From positions 624,499 through 688,498 of the forward strand of contig NW_003314323.1 of NCBI RefSeq assembly GCF_000143415.4: a stretch of DNA of 64,000 nt. Reading direction: 5' to 3'. Positions within the stretch are counted from its first letter, which is position 1. Every line of letters starts with the position of its first letter. Positions 1,182-63,932 of the stretch are shown here, piece by piece. A program made the translations under genes and the position numbers. The notes under the pieces were generated by a model. The model was not told where the DNA came from, searched no databases, and worked only from the letters and a program-made list of their open reading frames with translations. Source of the stretch: Selaginella moellendorffii (taxonomy: Eukaryota > Plantae > Lycopodiophyta).

Positions 1182-3419
1182 ATGTTTCTTACTTCCAGGC
1201 GATTGAAATGGCAGCAGAGGCTGAGAAGACGGAAGAGAGGCTATTCTAAGCACGCAGCAAAGGAAGAAGTAACCCAACCAAGTCTGGAGGTTCTTTCGTC
1301 CTTGCTCCTGCAGTGCCTGGACGTGGAAGTCGCTCGCCACGTTCACTCCCACATCTCCAATCACGGGCTGGAAGCGTCGCTAGCGGACCAGCTCGTGGCG
1401 ACGTACGTGAGGCTTGGATGTTTGAGTGAAGCTCACCAAGTACTTAACAGGAACTCTTGCTCGGGGCTGGGGACATGGAGTGGGATCATCACGGGGTATG
1501 TCCAGAATGGGCAGCGGGCAGCGGCATTTTTTCTCTTCCGGAAAATGCAGCAGGACGGCATCGCTCCCAACAAGTTCGTGCTGGTGAGAGTCTTGAGCAG
1601 TGGTTGCTCGAGCCTCGCACAGGGAAAGCTGGCTCACGCGTGTTTATCAGAGGCAACGAGTGGCTCCGACCGTGTTGCTGGAAACGCAGCGATCAACATG
1701 TATGGGAAGTTTGGGTGCGTGGAATCGGCAAAGGCAGTGTTTGACAGAGTTTTGGAGCGGGATATCATCACCTGGACGTTGATGGTCTCTGCGTATGCCC
1801 AAAACGGGCATACCCGAGAGGCATTTCAAGTCTTTGGGAAGATGCTGGTGGAGGGGGTGGTGCCAAACAAGGTGACTTTTCTGGCTATACTCAACGCTTG
1901 CTCGAGCTCGTCACAGGCTGGTTTTGTCCATCGGTTGCTCTTTGAGAGCGGGTTCCAGTTCACCGCCATGGTAGAGTCCTCTCTCGTGGACGCGTATGGC
2001 AAATGCAAGAACGTCAGTGCTGCAAGGGCAGTGTTTAGCTCGATGACGGACAAGACCAACGTGGTGACTTGGAACGCTTTCATCAGAGCTTTGGCCAGCA
2101 GCAGAGATGCGAGTGGAGCTCTTCAAACGTTTCGAAGCTTGCTGCTCCAAGGCTTGGTTCCCGACACGGTTACATTCATCAATGCCAGCCAGGGAGCGAA
2201 AACTCCTCCGGAAGCAAAGTACCTCGAAACTTGCCGCCAGGAGAGTGGGGTTCAACTGGACATAGCTCTCGGCAACGCTCTCATCAACATGTTTGGCGGC
2301 AGCAGCCAGGCTTGCGAAGCTCGGAGAGTTTTCGATGCGACTCACAACAAGAACATCGTCTCCTGGAACGCGATGCTGTCGGCTTACTCTCAGAACGGAC
2401 ACTTCGAAGAGACGATCGCACTCTTCAAACAGATGGCCTCGACCAAGACGGTGAAGCCCGATAAGCTTACGTTCGCGTCGGTTCTAAGCTCGTGTGCGAA
2501 CCTCGAGAACCTCCGGGAAGGAAAGCTAGCGCACGCAGCAGCAGTGGAAGCTGGCCTGGAGTTCGCAGTGCCCGTAGCTGCGACGCTCATCCAGATGTAC
2601 TCCAAGTGCCACTGCCTCGAAGAAGCCAGGGACATTTTCAGCCGGAGTCCATCCTCGGACGTGGTAGCGTGGACTGTGATGATCTCGGCCTATGCTCAAA
2701 ACGGTCGACCCCAGGAAGCCATCGCTCTCTTCTTCCGCATGACAGTGCCTCCAGATGGCGTGGCCTTCGCCACCGCCCTGGGAGCCTGTGCGAGTGCCGA
2801 GAACTTGGAGGCCGGAAGAGTGGTCCGAGCACAGATCGTGGAGCTTGGGCTGGACGCTGAGAGGGCGGTGGCCAACGCGGTGCTGGACCTCTACGGCAAG
2901 TGTGCCGAGATCGTCGAGACAGCGGAGATCTTCGGCAGGATGAGGCAGCGAGACAGAGTTTCGTGGAACACTATGGTGGCGGCGTATGCCCGAGCCGGGC
3001 ATACCGCCGGGAGCCTGTGGTGCTTCCGGGCGATGCAGCTGGAGGGCGTTTGTCCGAGCGAGGTGAGCTTGGTGAGCGTGCTCTCGACATACAGCCACGC
3101 GGGTCTCGTCGAGCAGGGCTGCCAGTGCTTCGCCTCCATCGCGAGCGACTATGGGATGGTTCCATCGCGCGAGCAGCAGGGGTGTGTGGTGGATCTCCTG
3201 GGCCGAGCGGGGTCGTGGATTGCGGAGGATTTGATCCGGGTGGTGGCTCCATCCACGTCGAGCTCCGAGCTGTGGAAGGCGGTGTTGAGCGCTTGCAGGA
3301 TCCACTCGGACGTGGAGCTGGGCGAGTGTGCGGCTGCTTGTGTTCTGGAGATGGATCCTGGCAGTGACTCCGCTCATATCATCTTGTCCAGCATCTATGC
3401 TATGGATCATCCAACTTAG
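1182..3419 (+). CDS. PLS-class PPR protein with C-terminal E domain, no DYW; probable organellar RNA-editing factor
   Basis: Intronless 745-aa ORF with repeated motifs (NALINMF, DVVAWTVMISAYAQNG, VSWNAMLSAYSQNG); E domain ELWKAVLSACRIHSDVELGECAA; Arg-rich N-terminus ending RGYS resembles a mitochondrial presequence. Confidence 0.93.
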   Translation: MFLTSRRLKWQQRLRRRKRGYSKHAAKEEVTQPSLEVLSSLLLQCLDVEVARHVHSHISNHGLEASLADQLVATYVRLGCLSEAHQVLNRNSCSGLGTWSGIITGYVQNGQRAAAFFLFRKMQQDGIAPNKFVLVRVLSSGCSSLAQGKLAHACLSEATSGSDRVAGNAAINMYGKFGCVESAKAVFDRVLERDIITWTLMVSAYAQNGHTREAFQVFGKMLVEGVVPNKVTFLAILNACSSSSQAGFVHRLLFESGFQFTAMVESSLVDAYGKCKNVSAARAVFSSMTDKTNVVTWNAFIRALASSRDASGALQTFRSLLLQGLVPDTVTFINASQGAKTPPEAKYLETCRQESGVQLDIALGNALINMFGGSSQACEARRVFDATHNKNIVSWNAMLSAYSQNGHFEETIALFKQMASTKTVKPDKLTFASVLSSCANLENLREGKLAHAAAVEAGLEFAVPVAATLIQMYSKCHCLEEARDIFSRSPSSDVVAWTVMISAYAQNGRPQEAIALFFRMTVPPDGVAFATALGACASAENLEAGRVVRAQIVELGLDAERAVANAVLDLYGKCAEIVETAEIFGRMRQRDRVSWNTMVAAYARAGHTAGSLWCFRAMQLEGVCPSEVSLVSVLSTYSHAGLVEQGCQCFASIASDYGMVPSREQQGCVVDLLGRAGSWIAEDLIRVVAPSTSSSELWKAVLSACRIHSDVELGECAAACVLEMDPGSDSAHIILSSIYAMDHPT

Positions 3420-3901
3420 ATGGAGTTTCTTGAGTGTGATCCTCGAAAACCATGCAGAGAAACTTCTCTTGAGGACTTTTCCATAGCCTGTTGACATTGT
3501 GACAAGGATATAGTCTGAAAGGATTCTAAGCTTGCGAAGAAACCATGCGGTGGCAAAGAAGGACATGATCTTGGTTCCTGCGACGACTTCCTTGGTATGA
3601 TTTCGCAATGTCTGGCGGTATCGAAGGTTTAGCCGAGAATCCCGAGCGGTTTCTTTTCTGGTGATGCATCCGCGGAAGACTTCGGCGAGTGGATAAGCAC
3701 GGAAAATTGTACAAAAGTCTGGACAGAATGGTGGCGTGCCAGCGACTTGAAAATGGTCGCGTTTTTTTTTGACAAGTCATGTGGCGAGTTTGGTGGGAAG
3801 ACCAGCATGATTAAAGTCTTTGTCGGAAGCTCCGGATCATCTCATCACAATCACAAGCTTTTCTCGAGATGGATCGCCGATTTAGAGGTTTGCTTTGCTC
3901 T

Positions 3902-52024: not shown

Positions 52025-54178
52025 ATGGGGTCGAATGCGACGAACTGGAAGCTGGAGGCGCATCCAAACATGCCCAAAGGCAAGATTTTGGCCATGATTG
52101 TGTTGGACGGATGGGGGGAGCAAATCAAGGACGAGTACAATGCGATCCATGTCGCTCCCACTCCATGCATGGATTCGTTCCGCGAGGTAAAAGCGCTTTT
52201 TGGATCTGGATCTGGATCGATTGATCTTGTTGCTTTTTTTCTTTTAGACTGCCCCCGATCGGTGGAGACTTGTCAAGGCGCATGGACCTGCCGTCGGCCT
52301 TCCAACCGAGGATGACATGGGAAATAGTGAGGTTGGTCACAATGCTTTGGGAGCGGGACGTATTTTTGCTCAAGGGTATTTTGTAGAGCTTCTCTGTGAG
52401 CTTTCTCACAGTGTTTTTGTTCTTCCCATTTCAGTGCGAAGCTCGTCGACTCGGCTATTGCAACCGGGAAGCTGTTTAAGGGAGAGGGGTTCAATTACAT
52501 CAAGGAGGCTTTTCCTACTGGTACCCTCCATCTCATTGGATTGTTGAGTGATGGTGGTGTCCATTCTAGATACGACCAGCTTCAGGTTTCTTCTTCTTTC
52601 TTTCGCTTTTCTGTGCGGGGTATTGACTCTCGATTTGCAGGGTTTGATGAAGGGGGCCGTGGAAAATGGCTGCAAGAGACTTCGTGTGCATGCTCTTACG
52701 GATGGACGTGATGTTCTTGACGGGACGAGTTTTAAGTTTTTGGAGATGCTAGAGAACGATTTAAAGGAACTACGTGAGAAGGGGTGCGACGCCCAAGTTG
52801 CATCTGTTGGTGGGCGTATGTACGTGACCATGGACAGATACGACGTATGTATTTTCCTCTCTCTTTTTTTTGTTTTTGCTTCTCTTTTTTATCCCTGTTT
52901 AACTTGTGTTGCTCTCCAGAATGATTGGAACGTCGTGAAACGAGGCTGGGATGCTCAAGTGTTGGGCGAAGCTCCTCATAAGTTCACGAATGCACTTGAA
53001 GGGCTGAAGAAGCTCAAAGAAGCGGACCCCAAGTTCAATGACCAGTACTGTCCCGCGTTCGTCATCGTTGACGAGGCGGGCAAACCCGTTGGACCGATAG
53101 TTGATGGTGACGCCGTTGTCACCATCAACTTCCGTGCCGATCGGATGATCATGCTTGCAAAGGCTTTGGAGTGGGAGAAGTTCGATAAGTTTGATCGTGT
53201 TCGTGTTCCAAAGATTCGGTACGCGGGCATGCTACAGTATGATGGCGAGTTGAAACTTCCCACGAAGTATTTAGTTGATCCCCCGGAAATTGAGAGAACC
53301 TCTGGTGAGTTTTTGGTAAAGAACGGCGTCCGGACTTTCGCTTGCAGGTAAGATTTACTCTTCTTTGCAATGTATCCGCTACTAAACTGTCTCTTTGCAG
53401 CGAGACTGTGAAGTTCGGGCATGTTACATTTTTCTGGAACGGAAACAGGTCTGGCTATTTTGATAGCAAGCTGGAAGAGTATGTTGAGATTCCTAGCGAT
53501 TCTGGCATTACTTTCAACGAGCAGCCAAAGATGAAAGCCTTGGAAATCGGTGAGAAGGCGCGGGACGCCATTCTCAGCAAAAAGTTTGATCAGGTAACTC
53601 CAAAGTTTGCATCGTCCCATCTTATTCTTTCGCTTCTTAGATAAGGGTTAATTTACCCAATGGTGACATGGTTGGTCACACTGGAGATCTCAAGGCGACC
53701 ATTGTGGCTTGTGAAGCGGCCGATAAGGCTGTTAAGGTGAAGTTCCTTGCATTTTTATTTTCTGTGTCAGACGATGTTTTTCTTTTTTGTTCTTGCAGCT
53801 CATGGTTGATGCTATTGAACAAGTTGGCGGAATTTTCGTGATAACCGCTGACCATGGAAACGCGGAAGACATGGCAAAGAGGAACCCCAAAACTGGGGAG
53901 CCTATCAAGGACAAGGACGGAAACATTCAAATCCTCACATCTCACACCTGTGCTCCGGTAAGCTTTGTAACTTCGTGGTAGTGATCTTTAGGCCTCACTT
54001 AAACCATGGTCACCAGGTTCCATTTATTATCGGCGGGCCTGGATTGGCAAAAGAGATAAAATTGAGGAAGGATTTGCCTACGGCAGGACTTGCAAACGTT
54101 GCCGCGACGGTGATGAATTTGCATGGTCTTGTAGCGCCATCGGACTATGAGCCTTCTATGGTCGAGTGGGTCAAGTAA
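52025..54178 (+). CDS. iPGAM: 2,3-bisphosphoglycerate-independent phosphoglycerate mutase
   Basis: [66 protein letters not shown]. Confidence 0.97.
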
Positions 54179-54259
54179 CCATATTAACCCCCTTGATTGG
54201 ACAAATGAGATTTTATATAAAACTATCAATAAAAGAAGGCGAACCAATTCATTTGATGG

Positions 54260-54580
54260 CTCTTTTTGGATATTTGTTTTTTACTACAACTTTCAGCATT
54301 TGCTTGCATTAATTGTATTTAGATCGATCAAGAACATGTTGTACCACTCGTGGAATCTCATTCTTACTACTTTGAAGTCTTAAAGAACAAAACTAAGGCA
54401 CTTTACATTATAGCCTTGTGGGGACTGGTTCTTTTTGGATATTTGTTTTCTACTACAACTTTCACCATTTGCTTGTATTATTGTATTTAGATTGATCAAG
54501 AACATGTTGTAAAATTCATGGAATCTCATTGTTACTACTTTGAAATTTCAAAGAACAAAGTTAAAGCACTTCACATTGTA
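54260..54580 (+). repeat. Tandem duplication (~170-bp period) of the iPGAM 3' flank
   Basis: tctttttggatatttgtttt..tactacaactttca..gaatctcatt..tactactttgaa at about 54261 and 54430. Confidence 0.85.
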
Positions 54581-54599
54581 TGATCATTAATAGTTAGAA

Positions 54600-57150
54600 G
54601 TTTCAAAGAAGTTCTAAAGAACAAGAATAAGGCACTTTTTTAGAGACGGATTAACCATAATATATATTTAATTTTTCTTACATTTTTTTAGTTCTTATTT
54701 TGAGTAAAAAATATATTTTGAGTATATTTAAAATAAAGTAAAACTATAAATAAAACTATTATAAAATGCATACACTCTAGCACTAGGAAGCATTACAACA
54801 ATTACACCAACAACCAACTATAAGTAGGGAGGAACCCTTGCTTGTAAAAGGTTTGATGGGTATCCTTTTGCAGCCCTAACCTAAATATTATGGATAAATC
54901 ATATATCTTGATAATAATGAGAACCACACCTCACACCACATTGGAGATTGCATTGGTTTGGAGCATTAATAACAAGTATAGGGATGGGGATTTGATAATG
55001 AAAAATTATACCTTTATAAATTATTAAACTTTTCAGTCTATTTTAGTCACTTAGCCATAACTTTTGACAAGTCACATGTCCCAATAACATGAGAACCACA
55101 CCCCATACCACATTAGACATTGCACTCCAGTTTGGAGCATTAATAATAAGTATAAGGATTGGGATGTGATAATGAAGAATTATATCTTTATAAATGATTA
55201 AAGATTTTATTCTATATTATTCATTTAGCCACAACTTTTATTACTTGGAGGTGTGTCACCCATAAGTCCTCATCCTGCTAAAACTTTAAAAGTGGCCTTA
55301 AAACCACTTTAACTTTGCACTTCATCCAAGTGCTCTAAATATGTTATATCAATCATCAAAAGGTACCACTAATGTATTAACCTTTTACAATAAATCTATG
55401 TTTATTATTACTTATTTCATTGGTAATCCAAGGCCACCTAGACCAAACTATCCAATATATTAATACCCATCCTCAACCACTTCTTAACATCTTTAAAATA
55501 TGGTGGAACACTATCCTTTAACATCCCTTCTTTAATTTTTATTAAGTCTTTTTCCAATTATGGTAGTGGTTGTTAACATTGCCACTGGGTCAAGATACAA
55601 AAACTTGTTTATCAAATTCTATTAACTTCTAGAACTTCCTCACCATGTAATCATATCTTTTATTATTAAGCAAGAGGATCATTCCTCTTTCATTCCATCA
55701 TCAAAGATGTTAGAATGACATTTTGAAACACCACAACCTAATATAAACTTCATTCCCATCTTTTGCCACCAAAATGCCTCAGCCACTTAGAGCAAAATTT
55801 CAATGAGACATGCAAGATATCCAAATAGGTAGTGCTACCTATACTTAGATTGGGAATATAAACCATGTAATCTCTTGAAACAATTAGAGCTAACTTTTGA
55901 ACATTTTATTAAGTTTTATTTATGTTCATTCAGCCTTGGATTCCATAGTATTTGTATCTATTTATGTTCACTTTAACTTTGGACTCTTTAATATTTATAT
56001 CATCACCCACTATATAAATATAACCTTTCTTAGTCATATTGATTCTTTTGAAGTTTTCCCCCTTATTATTTTACAAAGACTTATTAAACCCTTTTGAGGG
56101 GCTATATTAGAGGCATTTAATTTAGCCACATGCACTTGTACATATATATCCAATCCTTCCATCTGTGCTATCATCCCCCCATCTATTATCTCCTAATGTG
56201 GCACACTTGGAGGTTGTATGATAGTGTGTGGAGGCTAGTTATGTGCCTCAATATAATGTTTTGCAATTGAGTGGAGTATATTGTAGTATTATATAAATAA
56301 TTTTCTTTTTTATTATATATAAAGCTTTTTAACTCTTTCAATATAATTATATTTATGCAGCTTAACTAACCAATATTATTTATATTATGTGACTTGTGCT
56401 TGCACTTCAGATTTATAATCTAATGCTATCATAAATTTAACATACCATATCTATAATAATGAGGAGTTGCTAAACTTTTTGGGCCATCTGATCCAGCCAA
56501 TAACATCTGTATGATGGGGGTAATTGTCAAAGGGTTATTTTTTTAACCACATCTTAGTAAATAATCATATTTGATGCTTGCTCTTAGCTAATGAGAGGTT
56601 GTTAATTGCCTGGAGTGAGAAAAAGGTGACATGTCATGTGTTGTTTGGCATTGATGGTCAACCTTTTGTAGTGGAGACTCATTGTGTCATTTGGATCTTA
56701 TAATTCCCTCTAAGGAATTTAAATAATTTCCTCTATATATTTATAATTATTTTTTGAATTCTTCTTTCAAAGTGGAATACAATATTTTTATTTTGATACT
56801 ATTCCAATTTAGCTTTTAATATAACAAAATTATGACAATCACAACAATATTTGCTAACTAGATAGCATATCCTGGGCAATAGTTAGTAAAAGAAATAAAA
56901 CGTAGACATGCTATGAGGTATTTTATTAGATAGAAAACTGAAGGGGTTAACAAATTAACTTTACTTAACAAAAAATAGACTTTGTGTACTAGCTTATAAA
57001 ATATGAATATAATAAACATACTTTGTAAGGTTTGTAAATCCTGAGCACTCACAACTTAAGCTTATACATATAACTGTAAACAAGACCGCCAAGAGAGTTA
57101 TATAAACAATGCAAAGGAATTATATTTGTTCCATAGATGGATTAGAAACA
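54600..57150. mobile_element. AT-rich, CpG-depleted decayed transposon-like region with an internal ~170-bp duplication
   Basis: Almost no CpG, no credible ORF; atgagaaccacacc..ccacatt at about 54918 and 55089. Confidence 0.5.
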
Positions 57151-57243
57151 ATTATAATAATAGCCATTTATTATTTAACAGCCCTCATTGATCAGTTATG
57201 TTGTAACACTGTTTATGGAGAATGTCTTATTTTTCTTACATAA

Positions 57244-59435
57244 TCACAGCGCAAAGGTGACGAGAAGCCATGAAGTAACTGCTACAACGCAGAAGCAACC
57301 ACAGAGAAGCCTTTGTACTCTCTTCCAAAAGCTTTGGCTTTTTCTTCCTTCCTCGCTCTCTTCGTTAAAGAGTGAAGTTTTGAGAGTCGGCAGACAAATG
57401 CAAGAACGAACTTTACCAGTCTTTGTGTTGCTCCTGCTCCAGTCACTTGATTGTAAAGAGGTAGTGTGAATTACCTCAGCCAAAATCTTAGCAACCTGTA
57501 GGATGACTGATCATAAAAAAATTCTTTGAAAAAATCAAGATGCCAAACCTCTTTTGTGTTCTGGTGAGTTACAAGGTGGCCACCAGAAAGCACCCAAAAC
57601 CGTGCTGAGCTCCCCAATCGTTGCGCCAAGCGTTTTCCATAGCGAATCTGTGCAATAACGTCATCTCTAGAAAAACAAAAGAGGACTCAATGTATGACGA
57701 TGCGAGCTTTCTTTTTTCTTTTTGTTCTCGACTTACATGCCATGGATGACTGCCACAGGAAATCCAGCCGCGCGTATTTGCTGTATGTCGGAGTCTTTGG
57801 CTTCGTGAGACCAGCAGGCATGAATGTGACCATTTAAGCCAGCCTTCGGTTGCATTCCACCAGTCTCCATGTTTTTCAGGTACTCCTGCGCAAAACCAAA
57901 AAGAACCAAAAAAGCAAAAAAGAGAAACGTTTCATCTCCGTGTTAGTGACTACAAAAGTTTCTACCTTGTAAAGGATGTTCTTTCTTTGTACTCCCCCGG
58001 TAATTTCATTCAAGTAGTCCTGGAAGTAGCTTGTTACGACAGCACAAAAGAATGAGACTATGACATACGCGCGTGTAATGCGTGTCTAGATCCACAAGAA
58101 TTCTCTGCTCGAGAGTTTTAGCTGTGAGAAATCTGTACGCAATCGAGAGTGACCGCCATTCCATCTGTAGCAAGTCCAAAGCTGAAGAAAGTTTATGTTT
58201 CAACAAAAAAAGACATACCTTTGGAAAGCACTGGAATCCGCCACCGGTGATACTTATAAGCGTCAAAGAGAGAACTCGTTGGGGGGCCATTGCTGCCAGT
58301 TTGAATCCGATCATTGCACCTGGAAGAAGAAAAACTCTGAGCTTGTCGAGAGAAAATCTGAAAGTTTTAAGTTCATGAACGGTGTTTGTACCCATGGAGT
58401 GACCACAGATGTGAGCCTGTTTCCAGCCGAGGAAATCAAGCAAAGAAAGTGCATCCATAGCCATGATTGTCGTCCTGCAATTCACAAAGAATTTAGTAGA
58501 AAATGAATCGAAGAAAAGAAAAACTAGAAGCAGAAGAACACTTACGAATACTCGGACTTTTGTGTGGGAATTGAGCTGTTTCCCACTCCCCTGTTGTCAA
58601 AAGTACAGATCTGAACTCCGCCATCGTTTTCAAAGCTACTACAAAACTTATTGCTTTCTTCTTCCACTTCACTCGGCGTACCACTGTTAGAAGCACTACT
58701 GGTTAGCTCACGAACATAAGGCCCCCAGAAACCATGGCCACAAGCAAGTCCTGGGAAAAAGAAAATGACCAAAAAATCAACGAACGCCCTCAAAAGAAGA
58801 AGAAAAATAAGTCTAGAAGTCGATCGACAAGATCTAGTCCCCGAAAGAAAAACACTCGAATAGAAGAATCTGAGCTTCGAAAGAAGAAAGTACTGAAAAA
58901 ACTCAGTACAAAACCAATGAACTCAACTACGAAGAAATCGACAGAGAGAACTACAAACCAATGAACTTAAAGTTCTTAGCGCAACCAGCAAAGTAGAAGG
59001 AGATAGGAACAAGAAAATGCCAAAAGGAATCTGGAGAGCTCCCGAATTTTGGGAAGCATATCCAGCGAGCTAGCTGTCTCTGTGACCCACAAGCTCATTA
59101 AAATGCAGCGTAGCAGCACAAAACTTCTTCTTTTTTTTAAGGAAAAGAAAGAATTTGTTATCTTTTGCGAGTGCCCTAGGGCCTGATCGATCGATCAATG
59201 CATCAATCAATCAACAGTTCCAATTTCCGCTCCAATCCAATCCCATCGAAGTGAAAAGAGAGAAAGAAAGAGAGATCCTCTTACCTGGTATGAGCAGTAG
59301 CTTTGTGGCGCCAATTCCATATAATTGGTAGCTGATGACGACGCCGTGCGTGGATCCTGGCGCCAGGCACGAGCTCCCCTCGCCATTGCCCAGCGCCCCG
59401 GGCGCGGAATATGCCCCTCCAAGATCTTCCTCCAT
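57244..59435 (-). CDS. Alpha/beta hydrolase (AT5G53050-like) with hydrophobic C-terminal tail
   Basis: TFDNRGVGNSS, AHICGHSMGAMI (GxSxG), ISITGGGFQCFPK, GGHLVTH. Confidence 0.88.
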
Positions 59436-59699
59436 TTTGCGAGGGGCTAAAATGTGCAAAGAATATTCTATGTTCGATGAATATTCTTGTGTGAGGAATA
59501 TGCTTATAGTTTGAAATGTTGGAGAGAAAAATAATCAATGCTGTATTGTTGTTACACGCGACGAAAAATAACCATAGTGTTACATAGACATACAATGACG
59601 AAGTGAAGAACACTTACTCTTTCTTGGACGAATTGTTTTGGTTTGCCGACTGGAAATCGTCTCTGCTGCTGCGAATTCTTGGAAGAATTTGGCTCTCGA

Positions 59700-62600
59700 T
59701 CAGGCCTTGAGCTGCTGCTGCTGCTGCTGTGATTCCAAGCGACTGACTTGGTTCTTCCACGCCTGCGCGCACTCGTCGATGGAAGCTCGCCGCGAAGTTC
59801 TTCGCGACATGGCCTTGAGATTTGGAACTGGATGATGCTTGACAATGGTGGTGGTGGCGTTGTTCTCCCCCTGGTTCTCCTTGTTGCTGCTGCCATGGCT
59901 CCGGTTTACGCTGTTGCTCCGGAAGTTATCGGTCGAGTAGTAGAGCACGGACTTCGCGAGCTTGGGCGGCGGAGGAGAAGGATCCACTGCTATCACGCTG
60001 CTCGTCGTGTTCTTGCTCGCCGGGGAGCTCGTCGAGCCGCGGACGCTCGCGCTTCTCAGGTGATGGTTTGCAGCGTCTCTCCTGTCTCTCACTACCGAGT
60101 GCCTGTTGTTGCTGCTGCCGCTGTCGATGTTCATGCCCGCCAGCTTGTTGGAGATGCCTTCCCAGTCCTCGAAAGTAACTTGCCTCCTGGGAGGATCCTT
60201 TGAGTCGGCTTCGCCCGTTGCCGCTGGCTTTGGAGTAGCGCCGTGCTGCTGCCTCAAGCTCAGCCTACGAAGGAGACCGGAGAATGGGACCTTGAGCTTG
60301 TCGGAGCTTGATTTCTTCGCCTGCGCTCGTTCCTCTGGTATCTTCTGGCTGAAGCCTCGAGCCAGTCCGGGGGGAGGGACTGCAATGTCCTCTGGCCATC
60401 CTCTTGATTTGCTTTGGCTCGGCTGTAGCTGAATTGCCTCCTCCTGTTCTATCTCTGGCTTTGTTACGATGTCCTGAGTTTCGGGACGGGGTGGATCCTG
60501 CTTTTCTGCTCCCGCAACCTGTTCTGTGCTCGTCAATAGTATTTGCAGCCACTTATCGAGAGTGTTCTTCCCTTCCTTGATGCTTTCCTCGTCGCATGAC
60601 ATCTCCCCGCGTTCTGACAGTGCCTTCCTTGCCTCCGGCGAATGCAGCTCCACAAAGTTCCTAGCCGACGGTGTCCTCGAGCACTTGGAACTTCCTGCTG
60701 TTACGCGGGAATCTATCGCGGAGACGTCGATCTCAAAGCGCTCGCTGCTATCCCTGCTCTCCTTGCTCTGTGGTGCATGGAGTATGCCTTTGAATCGCTG
60801 GCTCCCGCAGCTCGCATAACCACTGTCAGTGTTCTGCTTATCCCTCTTGATAACAGGCATCAGCTTGAATGTTCTCGTCACCTCCGATCCTTCACCATCA
60901 CTGCCCGCATTCGCAATGTTACTTCCATCGTCAGCTTCCCTTGGCGCAGCACCACCCTCGTAGTAAATTCTGTCCATTGACGGTTTTGCAGACGCGGGTG
61001 CCGCTGGTGTTTCCCGACGAGCCACACTGTTTTCTTTGTCAAGTCGTTGCCGTGGAGCGGACTGGGATCTCTTGCTCTTGGCCGGTGTTGTCGACTTCCG
61101 GAATCGCTTATGACTACGATGCTGATCTTCGGAGTCACTGAAGCTGTCTTGCTTGTTGGAGACGTTGGCTGGCTGATGGTTTTGGAGATCCCTTGCTTTC
61201 AAGACTTCTCTGTCTCTGGTGCTGCTTCTCTGCTTCTTGGGAGGAGCATGACGATCTGCTTTCACCAGCTGCGTTGAAGATTTCTCTGGTACGCATTCCT
61301 CGTCTGCAGCAGCCTCCACGCTTCCGGACTCTAAAAGAGGAACTGGCTTGGTCATCTGCAGCAGGTCTTGCCTCTTATGAGCGTTATGCAGAAGCCGAGA
61401 TTCGGCCGCGTTGCATGTCTCAGCTTGAGACTCCAACTGCGCCATGAGAGAATTGCAGGCGATTTCATTCAGCCTCGACTCTTCCTTATAAACCACGCTC
61501 CTGATTAACGGTCGCGCAACCATTAGTCACGTAAAGATTACATACGATAGAATGACTTACTGGTGCATAGTTTCTTGGATCATCCGCTCAAGGCAGATGC
61601 GATATGATGCCTGTGTTTCGTTCCACTGTCTCTGCTTTTCCACCTGCTTTCTTTGTTTTCGTAGCTCTGCTTCCAGAGTGTCCAAGGCAGCCTTTTCCTG
61701 TTCATTTTGGTCTTTGATACTCTGCAGGGCCTGCTTCAGTTTTGAAGATTCGCCTTCCCTCATATGCTTTTCTTCCTCCCTCAGTAGCTTGATCTTTGAC
61801 TCTCTCTTTATGGATGATAAAATTCGGCTGTTAGTGTCACCGTCCTGTGAATGAAGAGGTGACAGACAACTCGGAGAATGCAGGTTTTCCTTTTGAAGGC
61901 CAGTCAAGGATCGATACTGATTAACAAAATGTGTCAGTTTTAACATAATATTAACCAGACACTGCATACCTTATCTCGAATTTGAACCAGAGAACGATTT
62001 GTAAGAAGGGGTTCACTTTCTTTTATAGCCTTCCAATTTCCAAAACCAAACTTCTGATATCCTCGCAAAAGCACATCTTCCTCCGAAACAGTCCAGTCTT
62101 TTTGGTGTAATCCTGAAAGTAGCATGCGAAATATAGTGTTTTTCGTACGTTGGAACAAGACAAAGACAAATGCCAACCTGAAGGTGAAGACGACAGCCTG
62201 GAGTTTGCAGATTCGTCTCCTTTCTGAAGCCGGACGAGCCCAGCCACTGCAAGCCCCGAGCGTTTCTTCTTCTCTAGAAAATGATGTGACCATTGATGAT
62301 CGTTTATGCACGTCTTTCCATCTGGAAGCTCGTCTTCACCACCAAGAAAGAAAAAAGAAAAACACCTTTGTCTGAAAAGAACGAAGTATTAGCCAAAGCA
62401 TAGATTGTACAACGAGTGATTACCGGAATCCAATATTCGGTGAATCAAATGCTGTAAGAAACTGATTAATCGACACCCCAAGCTGGAGATCCCACCAAGG
62501 AATGAGAAACTCAAGCTTCTCCTTTTTCTTCAGACTCACTTGCCATTGCGCGAGCCTTAGATTGTTAAGAACCGTCTTGCCGCCTCCTACGCGGGGAGAG

Positions 62601-63199
62601 AGACAAGAGTTATCGTCACGTAGGAAAGTAAAACACAACATACTTGAATAGGGGAACCAGTGGCAGACTTCCCAGGCTAGTGGCGAGGCGGGGTCAGCAT
62701 GCCAGTAAAGAACGTTGCCATACGAGTCTACTCTAAAACACGCCGGATCAAAACCAGCATTGCTGCGCAAAGAAATCCACAATACTTTTTAGCAAGAGAC
62801 AAGCAAAAAACTACTTTTTACCCGAGGTGATCAAGCTGCTGCCAGAGAACATCCTTGAATTTGTGGAGATGCGAGGGATGCTCCTTTCTGGTGTCACTGA
62901 GAACGATCGGGAACAAATCTTGGACTTCTTCCAGCTTTGCAACCTGGAAAGAACTCGTTGGAACAAAACCCTACCACAGTAAGAAACCGCACCTCTTCCG
63001 GACGAGCAGTGTAGGGAAGAAACGCTCTGGGAGGGCCATCTGCGTGAGGCAGCAAGAATCCCTGGAGCTGGAGCCAGGCACAGGCGTTCCGGCACAGCTT
63101 CGCGTAGGCCCGAGGATACCCCAAGTGAGGATCGACCCTGCGATCTTCGTCCGAGAAGCAAATCCCCGCGGCCACCACTGAATCTTTCCTGCTTCCCAT
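59700..63199 (-). CDS. HNH-fold + telobox-type Myb + coiled-coil protein
   Basis: LGYPRAYAKLCR, NAGFDPACFRVDSYGNVLYWHADPASPLAWEVCHWFP..GGKTVLNNLR, LEFLIPWWDLQLGVSINQFL; in-frame Myb exon 61970-62112; MHQSVVYKEESRLN coiled coil; LDKWLQILL. Confidence 0.85.
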
Positions 63200-63436
63200 G
63201 AAAAATCGACCCAAGAACTAGCCTAGCCTTCGATCTGGAGCGCCGGAGGCGAAATTTCAGGCATTTCTTGGCCAAGAATCTTGGCGCTGCTGCGCGGCAT
63301 TGTGGCGCCCTCCCCCCGGGCTCGCGAATTCGTGCGCGCCTAATAATCCTAGGTCACACCCCTCTCCGACCCGCCGGCGTCATCACTCCAGAGAAGAAAC
63401 GACCAAACAACACCCGACCTCTTCATTCATTCGAAG

Positions 63437-63472
63437 CAAACGGCTAGAAAATTTGTGTCAATCCAACGGCTC
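63437..63472. promoter_or_regulatory. Two MSA-like (AACGG) elements between the HNH-Myb gene and RPL29
   Basis: CAAACGGCT at 63437 and TCCAACGGCT at 63462. Confidence 0.45.
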
Positions 63473-63577
63473 AAATTCCCACCTGTACGGACATGTTTGG
63501 AAGGGAGCATATTCCTTTAGGGTTCTTGGCAGGCTAGGGTTCTAGGCAGTGTAAGCGGCGGAGATTGAGCGGCAGCG

Positions 63578-63819
63578 ATGGCGAAGTCGAAGAATCACAC
63601 TGCCCACAACCAGTCGAGGAAGGCGCACCGCAATGGCATCAAGAAGCCCAAGAGGCAGCGCTACACCTCCAAGAAAGGGGTAAGTAGAGATTTCTATAGA
63701 AATTTGTGATTGATCGATCCGAATACCGGCAGATGGATCCGAAATTCCTGAGGAACCAGCGCTACTCGAGGAAGCGCATGGCGCTGCTAGCGAAAGAGAT
63801 CGTGAAAGAAGAATCCTAG
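63578..63819 (+). CDS. RPL29: 60S ribosomal protein L29 (eL29)
   Basis: [26 protein letters not shown]|[11 protein letters not shown]; intron 63680-63732; TAGGGTT telo-boxes upstream; missed by the ORF track. Confidence 0.97.
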
Positions 63820-63932
63820 ATAGAAGAATGCTTGTCCCAATTTTCGATTTAATCCAGCAAAAGAATTTGCGTTGCTCATAAACCCTAAATTTCTACAGTG
63901 TTCTAGCGTTAGGGTTCTTGGTTGCCATAGCA

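What the first reader, a model, noticed from the sequence alone, without database searches (positions are those of the whole stretch)
59700..63199. HNH-fold protein carrying an extra telomere-binding-type (telobox) Myb exon
Seen: exon 61970-62112 splices in frame on both sides and gives DWTVSEEDVLLRGYQKFGFGNWKAIKESEPLLTNRSLVQIRDK|YRSL, placed between an HNH-like domain and a KEN-preceded coiled coil. Known: this fits the single TRF/telobox Myb pattern (W..EE..L..G..K.G.G.W..I..R..VDLKDKWR.L). As I recall them, angiosperm members of this uncharacterised family run from the HNH region to KEN/coiled coil with no Myb. The HNH motif is altered (WEVCHWFP for D-H; the last metal-ligand position is Ser), and two MSA-like boxes sit upstream. 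Inference: a cell-cycle-regulated nuclease or pseudonuclease targeted to TTTAGGG/telo-box DNA, an architecture I do not know to be described.
Basis: partly seen in the sequence, partly recalled or inferred. Interest (0 to 1): 0.78.

Follow-up and report, generated by a model that had tools for sequence, protein, structure and literature searches.

The report
Ancient plant HNH–telomere-type Myb protein
This Selaginella gene really does encode an HNH-nuclease-like domain joined to a TRF1/TRF2-type Myb DNA-binding domain, but this uncharacterised architecture is the old land-plant state that flowering plants have eroded, not an extra exon gained in Selaginella.

Summary
An 8-exon minus-strand gene (63199..59700, 1034 aa) is an allele of Selaginella moellendorffii LOC9637498. 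Exon 6 (61970-62112) encodes a complete Myb domain. Spliced contigs from four studies all include the exon, and skipping it would shift the reading frame.

The Myb is closest to human TRF2, TRF1 and zebrafish Terfa in both sequence and predicted fold.

The N-terminal module belongs to the HNH superfamily. Family-wide sub-threshold Pfam hits, remote homologues and a pLDDT-80 model whose top structural neighbours are HNH nucleases all agree.

The evolutionary reading changes. HNH-Myb-KEN-coiled coil is found in mosses, lycophytes, ferns and gymnosperms. A seed-plant duplication produced a copy whose Myb decays. Angiosperms keep only that copy, with a Trp-less relic or a deletion.

Most family members keep the D-H...N motif, and 13 Myb-bearing members keep the full D-H...N...N/H. 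The Selaginella copy has Cys and Ser at two metal-ligand positions, so it is probably a pseudonuclease.

Binding to telomeric or telo-box DNA and cell-cycle control (one strong MSA match and a conserved KEN motif) are inferences only.

No paper on the family was found. I rate it a new variant of known kinds, of moderate to high interest.

The parts
59700..63199 (-). Coding region of the 8-exon gene (1034 aa), an allele of S. moellendorffii LOC9637498
   Evidence: Spliced contigs confirm all introns.
62178..63199 (-). Exons 1-5, encoding the conserved N-terminal module (aa 1-269) that holds the HNH-superfamily core (about aa 95-215)
   Evidence: 43 columns are invariant across 92 land-plant members. 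HNH-clan Pfam hits occur in 40, 29 and 25 of 92 members. The AF2 core has pLDDT >90, and its top structural neighbours are HNH nucleases.
62534..62674 (-). HNH motif region (aa 140-167, split by intron 3): W-E-V-C143-H144 ... N158 ... S167
   Evidence: Column counts are D143 85/92, H144 91/92, N158 92/92 and position 167 variable. Selaginella reads C-H-N-S, against D-H-N-N in the gymnosperm A copies, the ferns and one Diphasiastrum copy.
61970..62112 (-). Exon 6: a complete single TRF-type Myb domain (aa 269-316)
   Evidence: Pfam PF00249 E 9.8e-9. The best PDB sequence match is TRF2 Myb at E 5.5e-9, or 5e-13 with the family profile. AF2 pLDDT is 85-98. Foldseek gives zebrafish TRF2 Myb-DNA at TMt 0.89 and rmsd 1.1 A. 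The exon is included in all transcript contigs.
61884..61892 (-). KEN motif (aa 325-327), directly after the Myb
   Evidence: KEN sits at this place in most Myb-bearing orthologues, from mosses to gymnosperms.
61395..61832 (-). Conserved helical, coiled-coil-like block (about aa 345-470, split by intron 7)
   Evidence: This is the most conserved block outside the N-terminal module. The segment examined (aa 331-480) is 51% E/K/R/Q/L, with only 2 Pro and 2 Gly in 150 aa. Weak Pfam hits go to coiled-coil families.
59700..61394 (-). Long, poorly conserved tail that is probably disordered, with one small conserved motif (aa about 740-755) and a C-terminal polyQ
   Evidence: no Pfam family. The CAG run shows a 3-nt length polymorphism.
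63200..63379 (-). 5' UTR as far as the transcript contigs reach
   Evidence: Contig pieces reach 63370-63379.
59585..59699 (-). 3' UTR as far as the transcript contigs reach
   Evidence: The X1 contig starts at 59585.
63462..63472 (+). MSA-like box TCCAACGGCTC (10 of 11 positions of YCYAACGGYYA)
   Evidence: It is the only match to YCYAACGGYY in the 64-kb window. It lies about 85 bp beyond the 5'-most contig end.
63436..63446 (+). Second, weaker MSA-like box GCAAACGGCTA (9 of 11 positions)
   Evidence: Read from the sequence. On its own it is not above chance.

Best explanation
The gene encodes a modular protein: an HNH-superfamily (beta-beta-alpha-metal) module, one TRF1/TRF2-type Myb domain, a KEN motif, a conserved coiled coil and a long disordered tail. 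This arrangement is the ancestral land-plant form of an uncharacterised family.

Proposed mechanism (inferred). The coiled coil pairs two chains. The Myb recognition helix docks in the major groove of duplex TTTAGGG-like repeats at telomeres or interstitial telo-boxes. The family consensus is V-Q-I-K-D-K-Y-R and Selaginella has V-Q-I-R-D-K-Y-R, which matches the V-x-x-K-D-x-x-R contact pattern of TRF1. Docking brings the HNH module onto that DNA.

In orthologues that keep D-H...N...N, the module is expected to cut or nick DNA. In S. moellendorffii two metal-ligand positions are changed (D143C and N167S) while His144 and Asn158 remain. This copy therefore most likely acts as a non-catalytic DNA- or partner-binding module, a pseudonuclease.

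The MSA-like promoter box and the conserved KEN motif suggest G2/M expression and APC/C-dependent removal.

Shown here: gene structure, transcription with the exon included, domain identities, phylogenetic distribution and the direction of change. Inferred only: DNA target, catalysis and cell-cycle control.
For: Gene model and transcripts.

Myb type. Pfam scores are above the cut-off. The top PDB sequence hits are TRF2, then SNAPC4, Terfa and TRF1, for both the single sequence and the family profile. The predicted fold superposes on TRF2- and TRF1-DNA complex Mybs at TMt 0.88-0.89 and rmsd 1.1-1.2 A.

HNH. HNH, HNH_4 and HNH_5 are the commonest Pfam matches across the 92 members. The remote homologue P0235 (E 5.7e-15 to the family profile) reaches the HNH_4 gathering score. 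The D-H/N/N columns align with remote homologues. The AF2 model has pLDDT 79.8, and Cas9 HNH, Gme HNH, McrA, ZRANB3 HNH and similar proteins fill the top of two independent structure searches.

Ancestry. The Myb is present in moss, lycophyte, fern and gymnosperm orthologues. The tree places all angiosperms with the gymnosperm degenerate-Myb paralogues (SH-aLRT 97). The angiosperm relic aligns to Myb helices 1-2 (hhalign probability 88.9%, E 2.4e-6).

Ligand changes. KEN conservation. MSA match.
Against: There is no direct evidence of DNA binding or of nuclease activity.

The third Myb tryptophan is Tyr or Phe, and helix 3 (IRDKYRS) is only a partial match to the plant telobox LKDKW(R/K)(N/T) (PMC3789555).

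The Selaginella copy lacks the basic arm before the first Trp: it has HQKDW where relatives have RRRW.

Plant TRFL proteins without the C-terminal Myb extension do not bind telomeric DNA in vitro (PMC3400083), and no such extension is seen here.

SNAPC4, which is not telomeric, scores nearly as well as TRF2.

The structural Z-scores for HNH are modest (5.9 or less), in a range the tool warns can reflect a common arrangement. P0001 itself does not reach any Pfam HNH cut-off.

The MSA boxes lie in a promoter shared with the eL29 gene, and the second box is not above chance.
Confidence: 0.55

Rival explanations
1. The Myb is not a telomere or telo-box reader. It could be a SANT-like chromatin or protein-interaction module, or it could bind another DNA motif as the SNAPC4 Myb repeats do. 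The protein would then act in mitotic chromatin or DNA repair, for example processing bridges or branched DNA, unrelated to telomeric repeats.
For: SNAPC4 ranks second in both PDB searches, and ADA2 and CHD1 SANT-type domains also match. The Pfam HTH_CHD1_Hrp3 hit reaches 29.6 bits. The third Trp is replaced, the match to the plant telobox consensus is only partial, and there is no Myb extension (PMC3789555, PMC3400083). The Selaginella copy has lost the basic N-terminal arm.
Against: Telomere-repeat binders (TRF2, Terfa, TRF1, Tbf1, AtTRP1) dominate the top matches. The four helix-3 positions that contact bases in TRF1 (V, K, D, R; from my knowledge of the TRF1-DNA structure) are conserved in the family consensus. 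The domain carries a net positive charge.
Confidence: 0.3
2. The Selaginella protein is still an active nuclease. It would use Cys143, His144 and other conserved polar residues to hold a softer metal such as Zn, Ni or Mn, as some HNH enzymes do with His- or Cys-rich sites.
For: His144 (general base) and Asn158 are kept. The surrounding module is under clear constraint, with 43 invariant columns. Position 167 is variable across the whole family, including angiosperms that have kept the module for over 100 My. This suggests the module works without a canonical fourth residue.
Against: Two ligand positions are changed at once in this lineage: Selaginella reads C-H-N-S and its Diphasiastrum sister copy reads A-H-N-S. 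This lineage sits on the longest terminal branch of the tree (0.56). The Ala in the sister copy cannot bind a metal.
Confidence: 0.13
3. The Myb exon is an annotation artefact or a rarely used alternative exon.
For: None found.
Against: All four transcript assemblies, from four studies, include it, and no skipping junction is listed. Skipping would shift the frame. The domain is conserved from mosses to gymnosperms at the same place.
Confidence: 0.01

Closest known systems
Vertebrate TRF2/TRF1 Myb (telobox) domains
   Same: A single three-helix Myb. It gives the best sequence matches (E 5.5e-9 single sequence, 5e-13 family profile) and the best fold matches (TMt 0.88-0.89). The helix-3 V..KD..R pattern is shared.
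   Different: Here the Myb is internal, not C-terminal. There is no TRFH dimerisation domain; a coiled coil is present instead. It is fused to an HNH module. The third Trp is Tyr. The Selaginella copy lacks the basic N-terminal arm.
Plant telomere/telo-box Myb proteins (TRFL class I, TRB/SMH; the 'TBP-like' MYB-related subgroup)
   Same: Single Myb with a KDK-aromatic-R recognition helix, in a plant lineage whose telomeres are TTTAGGG (PMC3400083, PMC3789555).
   Different: There is no Myb extension (TRFL class I) and no H1/H5 domain (TRB). The consensus LKDKW(R/K)(N/T) is only partly met. The solved plant domains AtTRP1, NgTRF1 and RTBP1 score far lower than TRF2. I could not compare with TRB Mybs.
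HNH (beta-beta-alpha-metal) nucleases: Cas9/IscB HNH, Gme HNH nickase, EcoKMcrA, ZRANB3 HNH
   Same: The D-H ... N ... N/H signature is present in the family's Myb-bearing clades. These nucleases are the top structural neighbours of the model.
   Different: Similarity is weak: no Pfam HNH gathering-score hit for this protein, and Z is 5.9 or less. About 90 family-specific residues precede the core and a conserved PWWD..G.S..QF helix region follows it. The Selaginella copy has Cys and Ser at two ligand positions.
Protist/metagenomic HNH-like + zf-MYND proteins (e.g. P0206, P0234, P0235) and the cryptophyte Hanusia phi protein P0264
   Same: They share the same HNH-like module (E 1e-12 to 1e-20 to the family profile) with a canonical D-H/N/N, joined to a small C-terminal targeting domain.
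   Different: The targeting domain is a MYND finger (or HhH in P0265) rather than a Myb. There is no coiled coil. The proteins are much shorter (250-470 aa).
Angiosperm members of the same family (annotated 'trichohyalin', 'myosin-like', 'HNH nuclease domain-containing')
   Same: Orthologous N-terminal module, a KEN motif and the coiled coil with its conserved ...QSSYR..LE.MIRDAMHQSV.YKE block.
   Different: The Myb is reduced to a Trp-less relic of helices 1-2 in Amborella, magnoliids, monocots and early eudicots, and is deleted in core eudicots. Position 167 is mostly Cys.

Membership tests
HNH (beta-beta-alpha-metal) nuclease superfamily | Significant match to a curated HNH profile | tested here: not met
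   P0001 gets only E 0.29 for PF01844 on aa 100-215. At family level, 40, 29 and 25 of 92 members give sub-threshold hits to HNH, HNH_4 and HNH_5. The remote homologue P0235 reaches the HNH_4 cut-off (22.1 against 22 bits).
HNH (beta-beta-alpha-metal) nuclease superfamily | Beta-beta-alpha fold of the core | tested here: inconclusive
   The AF2 model built with remote homologues has pLDDT 79.8, with the core above 90. HNH nucleases dominate the top rows of both Foldseek and VIA-align, but E is 0.18 or more and Z is 5.9 or less.
HNH (beta-beta-alpha-metal) nuclease superfamily | Catalytic His (general base) and structural Asn | tested here: met
   H144 is present in 91/92 members and N158 in 92/92. 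Both are present in the window protein.
HNH (beta-beta-alpha-metal) nuclease superfamily | Metal ligands: Asp before the His, and the last Asn/His | tested here: not met
   The window protein has C143 and S167. D143 is present in 85/92 relatives. N or H at position 167 is found in 13 Myb-bearing relatives.
TRF/telobox-type Myb domain | Single Myb fold with spaced aromatic residues | tested here: met
   PF00249 scores 35.7 bits against a 24.4 cut-off. AF2 pLDDT is 85-98. TMt is 0.89 to the TRF2 Myb. The aromatic residues are W, W and Y.
TRF/telobox-type Myb domain | Telobox recognition helix (VDLKDKWRN / LKDKW(R/K)(N/T)) | tested here: inconclusive
   The window has V-Q-I-R-D-K-Y-R-S and the family consensus is V-Q-I-K-D-K-Y-R-L. 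The V, K/R, D and R positions fit, but W is replaced by Y and N/T by S/L. The consensus is taken from PMC3789555.
TRF/telobox-type Myb domain | Closest relatives are telomere-repeat binders | tested here: met
   Among solved chains, TRF2 is best, Terfa, TRF1, Tbf1 and AtTRP1 all match, and SNAPC4 ranks second.
TRF/telobox-type Myb domain | Specific binding to duplex telomeric repeats | not testable with these tools
   Needs EMSA, anisotropy or ChIP.
Plant TRFL class I | C-terminal Myb followed by the plant Myb-extension motif | tested here: not met
   The Myb is internal and is followed by ...GDWE.EKEN and a coiled coil. The feature is as defined in PMC3400083.
APC/C KEN-box substrates | Accessible K-E-N motif, conserved in orthologues | tested here: met
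   KEN is at aa 325-327 and is kept in most Myb-bearing orthologues. Angiosperms keep a KEN at a different spot, inside the Myb relic. Degron function was not tested.
MSA-controlled G2/M genes | MSA element (YCYAACGGYYA) close to the transcription start | tested here: inconclusive
   There is one 10/11 match, the only YCYAACGGYY in 64 kb, and one 9/11 match. The promoter is shared with the eL29 gene. No expression data by cell-cycle phase are available.

The most novel reading that the evidence does not exclude
Non-flowering land plants, and possibly zygnematophyte algae, carry a dedicated telomere-repeat-targeted HNH nuclease. It would be dimerised by a coiled coil and gated to mitosis by MSA and KEN. 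This would be a plant counterpart of the nuclease-recruiting function of TRF2. Angiosperms dismantled it by losing the Myb and the last catalytic ligand, which would explain why Arabidopsis-centred telomere biology has not seen it.
Probability: 0.2. Interest if true: 0.8.

Novelty: new variant of a known kind. Interest (0 to 1): 0.6.

Why it matters
If the Myb does read TTTAGGG repeats, this family would be a previously unstudied class of telomere or telo-box protein that carries its own nuclease module. It is present in mosses, lycophytes, ferns and gymnosperms but stripped down in flowering plants. That gives a concrete, testable candidate for telomere or telo-box processing in the model moss Physcomitrium and the fern Ceratopteris. 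It also offers a clean natural series of domain decay: intact Myb, then degenerate, then a relic, then deleted. In that series the canonical catalytic set is never seen without an intact Myb. Finally, the family's angiosperm annotations ('trichohyalin', 'myosin-like') are uninformative automatic names that hide the HNH module.

Tried and rejected
- Pfam and NCBIfam on the N-terminal module alone gave no family.
- Sequence searches of the PDB with the module and with its family profile gave nothing at E up to 10.
- The first AF2 run, with land-plant sequences only, modelled the Myb well but left the HNH-like core at pLDDT 35-50. It was replaced by a run that included remote homologues.
- The ESM-Atlas feature search gave only low-score viral clusters (0.75), which I did not use.
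- The word search for short relatives returned only fragments of the same family.
- I could not identify an Arabidopsis or other Brassicaceae orthologue. None appeared in the top 120 hits or in the named clusters. The family may be absent or divergent there; this stays open.
- The Spirogloea muscicola proteins (P0179, P0269) carry the HNH-like module and end in a segment that resembles Myb helices 1-2 (Pfam E 0.022). The family Myb profile does not detect that segment and the encoding contig is not on record. A pre-land-plant fusion is therefore only tentative.
- The association between an intact Myb and the canonical D-H-N-N/H set is one-sided (0 of 66 Myb-less rows keep the set). It rests on only 5 independent pairs and is not significant.
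- Five literature searches found no paper on the family.
Full report
**The locus.** The stretch lies on the minus strand. Reading the reverse complement and joining eight GT..AG exons gives an open frame of 3105 nt and 1034 aa. The exons are 63199-62993, 62943-62822, 62762-62644, 62586-62424, 62371-62178, 62112-61970, 61916-61561 and 61500-59700.

A word search with the last exon found one protein, P0001. This is 'uncharacterized protein LOC9637498 [Selaginella moellendorffii]', 1029 aa and 97% identical. Its sequence follows my exon joins exactly, Myb exon included. It differs from the window protein at 22 positions, two of them conservative changes inside the Myb. The window is therefore the other allele or haplotype of that gene.

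**Is the exon used?** Logan contigs of four runs from four different studies were laid on 59500-63400. Every run has a contig in which all seven predicted introns are removed at exactly the predicted CT..AC (minus-strand GT..AG) borders. These include 61916>61970 and 62111>62177, which flank exon 6. One 3373-nt contig spans 59585-63370. No junction that skips exon 6 is listed, although contigs can miss rare isoforms. The exon is 143 nt long, so leaving it out shifts the frame and gives a stop after 26 codons. It is a constitutive exon.

**The Myb domain.**
- The exon alone scores 35.7 bits on Pfam Myb_DNA-binding (E 9.8e-9, cut-off 24.4).
- Against all solved chains, the best sequence matches are the human TRF2 Myb (E 5.5e-9), then SNAPC4, zebrafish Terfa and TRF1. 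Plant AtTRP1, NgTRF1 and RTBP1 score much lower.
- A profile of 25 orthologous Mybs gives the same order with stronger scores: TRF2 5e-13, SNAPC4 1e-11, Terfa 1e-9, TRF1 2e-8.
- AlphaFold models this part at pLDDT 85-98.
- Foldseek places it on the zebrafish TRF2 Myb-DNA complex (TMt 0.89, rmsd 1.1 A) and the human TRF1-DNA complex (TMt 0.88).
- The family recognition helix reads N-R-S-T-V-Q-I-K-D-K-Y-R-L-M, and Selaginella has ...L-V-Q-I-R-D-K-Y-R-S-L. From my knowledge of the TRF1-DNA structure, the base-contacting residues are V418, K421, D422 and R425. Those four positions are V, K/R, D and R here.

So 'telobox-type' is a fair description, with caveats:
- The third Trp is Tyr or Phe.
- The plant TBP-like consensus LKDKW(R/K)(N/T) (PMC3789555) is only partly met.
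- The Selaginella copy has HQKDW where relatives have a basic RRRW arm.
- There is no plant Myb extension. Arabidopsis TRFL proteins need that extension to bind telomeric DNA in vitro (PMC3400083).

**The N-terminal module.** Pfam, NCBIfam and PDB sequence searches give nothing significant for this protein alone. Four lines of evidence nevertheless point to the HNH superfamily.
1. When each of 92 family members is scanned, the commonest Pfam families are HNH (40 members), HNH_4 (29) and HNH_5 (25), all at the same place.
2. An exhaustive profile search found 680 proteins at E <= 0.001. Beyond the plant family it found shorter proteins whose HNH-like module is followed by a MYND finger, or preceded by an HhH motif in one case. 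One of them, P0235, reaches the HNH_4 gathering score. One relative is from the cryptophyte Hanusia phi.
3. Aligned to the family profile, these relatives show the classical pattern D-H-(F/W)-P-x-S-R-G-G ... N-L ... (A/V)-N-x-x-K.
4. A second AlphaFold run that included the remote homologues reached pLDDT 79.8, with the core above 90. Two independent structure searches then put HNH nucleases at the top. These include Cas9 and IscB HNH, Gme HNH nickase, EcoKMcrA, PtuB, GVE2 HNH, ZRANB3 HNH and Cap5. The scores are modest: Foldseek E >= 0.18 and VIA Z <= 5.9.

I accept the HNH relationship. The structural evidence is consistent rather than strong.

**Catalytic residues.** Across 92 members, the Asp before the His is present in 85, the His in 91 and the structural Asn in all 92. 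The last ligand position (167) is variable.
- By clade, the full D-H-N-N set is kept in the intact-Myb gymnosperm copies, the Myb-bearing ferns, one Diphasiastrum copy and some mosses. Two Sphagnum-type sequences (P0019, P0020) have D-H-N-H.
- Gymnosperm B copies have Lys at position 167, and the Myb-less fern copies have Cys, Ser or Arg there.
- Angiosperms have mostly Cys.
- Selaginella reads C-H-N-S and its Diphasiastrum sister copy reads A-H-N-S, on the longest terminal branch of the tree.

The D-to-C change, however, belongs to this lycophyte lineage and not to the family. The Selaginella protein is more likely a pseudonuclease than the family ancestor was. Among 91 rows, no Myb-less or degenerate-Myb protein keeps the canonical set (0 of 66), against 13 of 25 with an intact Myb. 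With only five independent contrasts this is suggestive, not significant.

**Direction of evolution.**
- A word search restricted to residues 1-330 returned 317 proteins. Pfam Myb is precomputed on the lycophyte, fern, gymnosperm (Ginkgo, Cryptomeria) and moss (Sphagnum, Ceratodon, Physcomitrium) proteins. It is absent from every angiosperm protein. Several of the former are already named 'Myb-like domain-containing protein' in UniProt.
- A local search with the Selaginella Myb found it in 33 of the 120 listed proteins, none of them from an angiosperm. The aligned segment shows a conserved ...GDWE.EKEN tail after the Myb.
- A maximum-likelihood tree of the N-terminal module separates two groups with SH-aLRT 97. 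One group holds the intact-Myb gymnosperm copies with ferns, lycophytes and mosses. The other holds the degenerate-Myb gymnosperm copies (Ginkgo Gb_34647, Taxus, a second Cryptomeria gene) together with all angiosperms. The root was placed at the midpoint for drawing only.
- The simplest reading is a duplication in the seed-plant stem, decay of the Myb in one copy, and loss of the intact copy in angiosperms.
- Alignments show the stages of decay. Gymnosperm B proteins keep a recognisable but Trp-poor Myb. Amborella, magnoliids, monocots and early eudicots keep about 20 residues of helices 1-2 (A-R-K-x-S-x-E-E-D ... C-K-A-I-Q-R-F). Core eudicots have deleted them.
- hhalign of the angiosperm relic against the Myb alignment gives probability 88.9% and E 2.4e-6 over 30 columns.
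- Fern paralogues lost the Myb independently.
- Spirogloea muscicola (Zygnematophyceae) has the module followed by a short Myb-like start. The gene models end there, the family profile does not detect the segment, and the DNA could not be fetched. I date the fusion securely only to the land-plant ancestor.

**Other parts.** KEN (aa 325-327) follows the Myb and is kept in most Myb-bearing orthologues. Angiosperms also have a KEN, but it aligns with the W-K-E-I of Myb helix 2. A KEN ahead of the coiled coil has thus been kept by two routes. The block at aa about 385-470 is the best-conserved part outside the N-terminal module, and its composition is typical of a coiled coil. The remaining 560 residues are poorly conserved.

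Upstream, the only match in the whole window to YCYAACGGYY is at 63462-63471 (1.4 matches are expected anywhere in 64 kb). A weaker box lies 26 bp away. Both lie 60-100 bp beyond the 5'-most transcript contig end. However, the 380-bp promoter is shared with a divergent eL29 ribosomal-protein gene. Cell-cycle control is a motif-level hypothesis.

**Comparison with the known, and novelty.** Each domain is a known kind. The combination of an HNH module, a TRF-type Myb, KEN and a coiled coil is tagged piecemeal by automatic annotation. It is not the subject of any paper I could find in five full-text searches. Neither the Selaginella telomere survey (PMC3400083) nor the MYB-related gene survey (PMC3789555) mentions it.
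- It is not a TRFL class I protein, because there is no Myb extension. It lacks the TRFH domain of TRF1/2. I could not compare its Myb with TRB/SMH proteins.
- I rate it a new variant of known kinds.
- The most useful outcome is a testable candidate for a Myb-targeted nuclease in moss and fern models, together with a corrected evolutionary reading: loss in flowering plants, not gain in Selaginella.

**Limits.** I found no Arabidopsis orthologue. There is no biochemical evidence. The HNH fold evidence is moderate. The tree is unrooted in principle. P0001, not the window allele, was the sequence modelled; it is 97% identical, with identical HNH motif residues and two conservative changes in the Myb.

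Noticed in passing
window 63580-63820 (+), with motifs at 63516-63524, 63880-63887 and 62966-62973: The divergent neighbour is an eL29-type ribosomal-protein gene (its ORF starts [26 protein letters not shown]) that shares the 380-bp promoter. Telo-box-like motifs sit around it: TTTAGGGTT at 63516 and AAACCCTA at 63880. Another (TAGGGTTT on the minus strand) lies inside intron 1 of the HNH-Myb gene. AAACCCTA occurs 5 times in the window against 1.3 expected.
   Followed up: partly
L001 1-6123 (Logan contig of SRR14092360); gene at 2921-3838: P0156 is a close relative of the plant HNH-like module and keeps PWWDLQ. It sits among tightly packed intronless ORFs that include a SET-like protein and a Ulp1-type protease. 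The contig looks like a giant virus or a very compact protist genome, which may bear on the origin of the module.
   Followed up: partly
proteins P0206, P0228, P0233, P0234, P0235, P0241, P0247, P0264, P0265: An unnamed family of short eukaryote-like proteins joins the same HNH-like module (canonical D-H/N/N) to a C-terminal MYND zinc finger, or to an N-terminal HhH motif in P0265. One member is from the cryptophyte Hanusia phi.
   Followed up: partly
window 59705-59722 and 61303: The C-terminal CAG (polyQ) run shows a 3-nt length difference in all four transcript sets. A 12-nt (EAAA) indel at 61303 separates the two alleles.
   Followed up: no
protein P0137 (Sesamum angolense, 585 aa): It is annotated 'NADH-ubiquinone oxidoreductase chain 5' but carries the full HNH-like module at residues 139-376. 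This is probably a chimeric gene model or a misnaming. Impatiens isoform P0270 is named 'SUN domain-containing protein 2-like'.
   Followed up: no
window 54001-58000: GC content drops to 0.32-0.35 here, against about 0.5 elsewhere in the window. I did not examine it.
   Followed up: no
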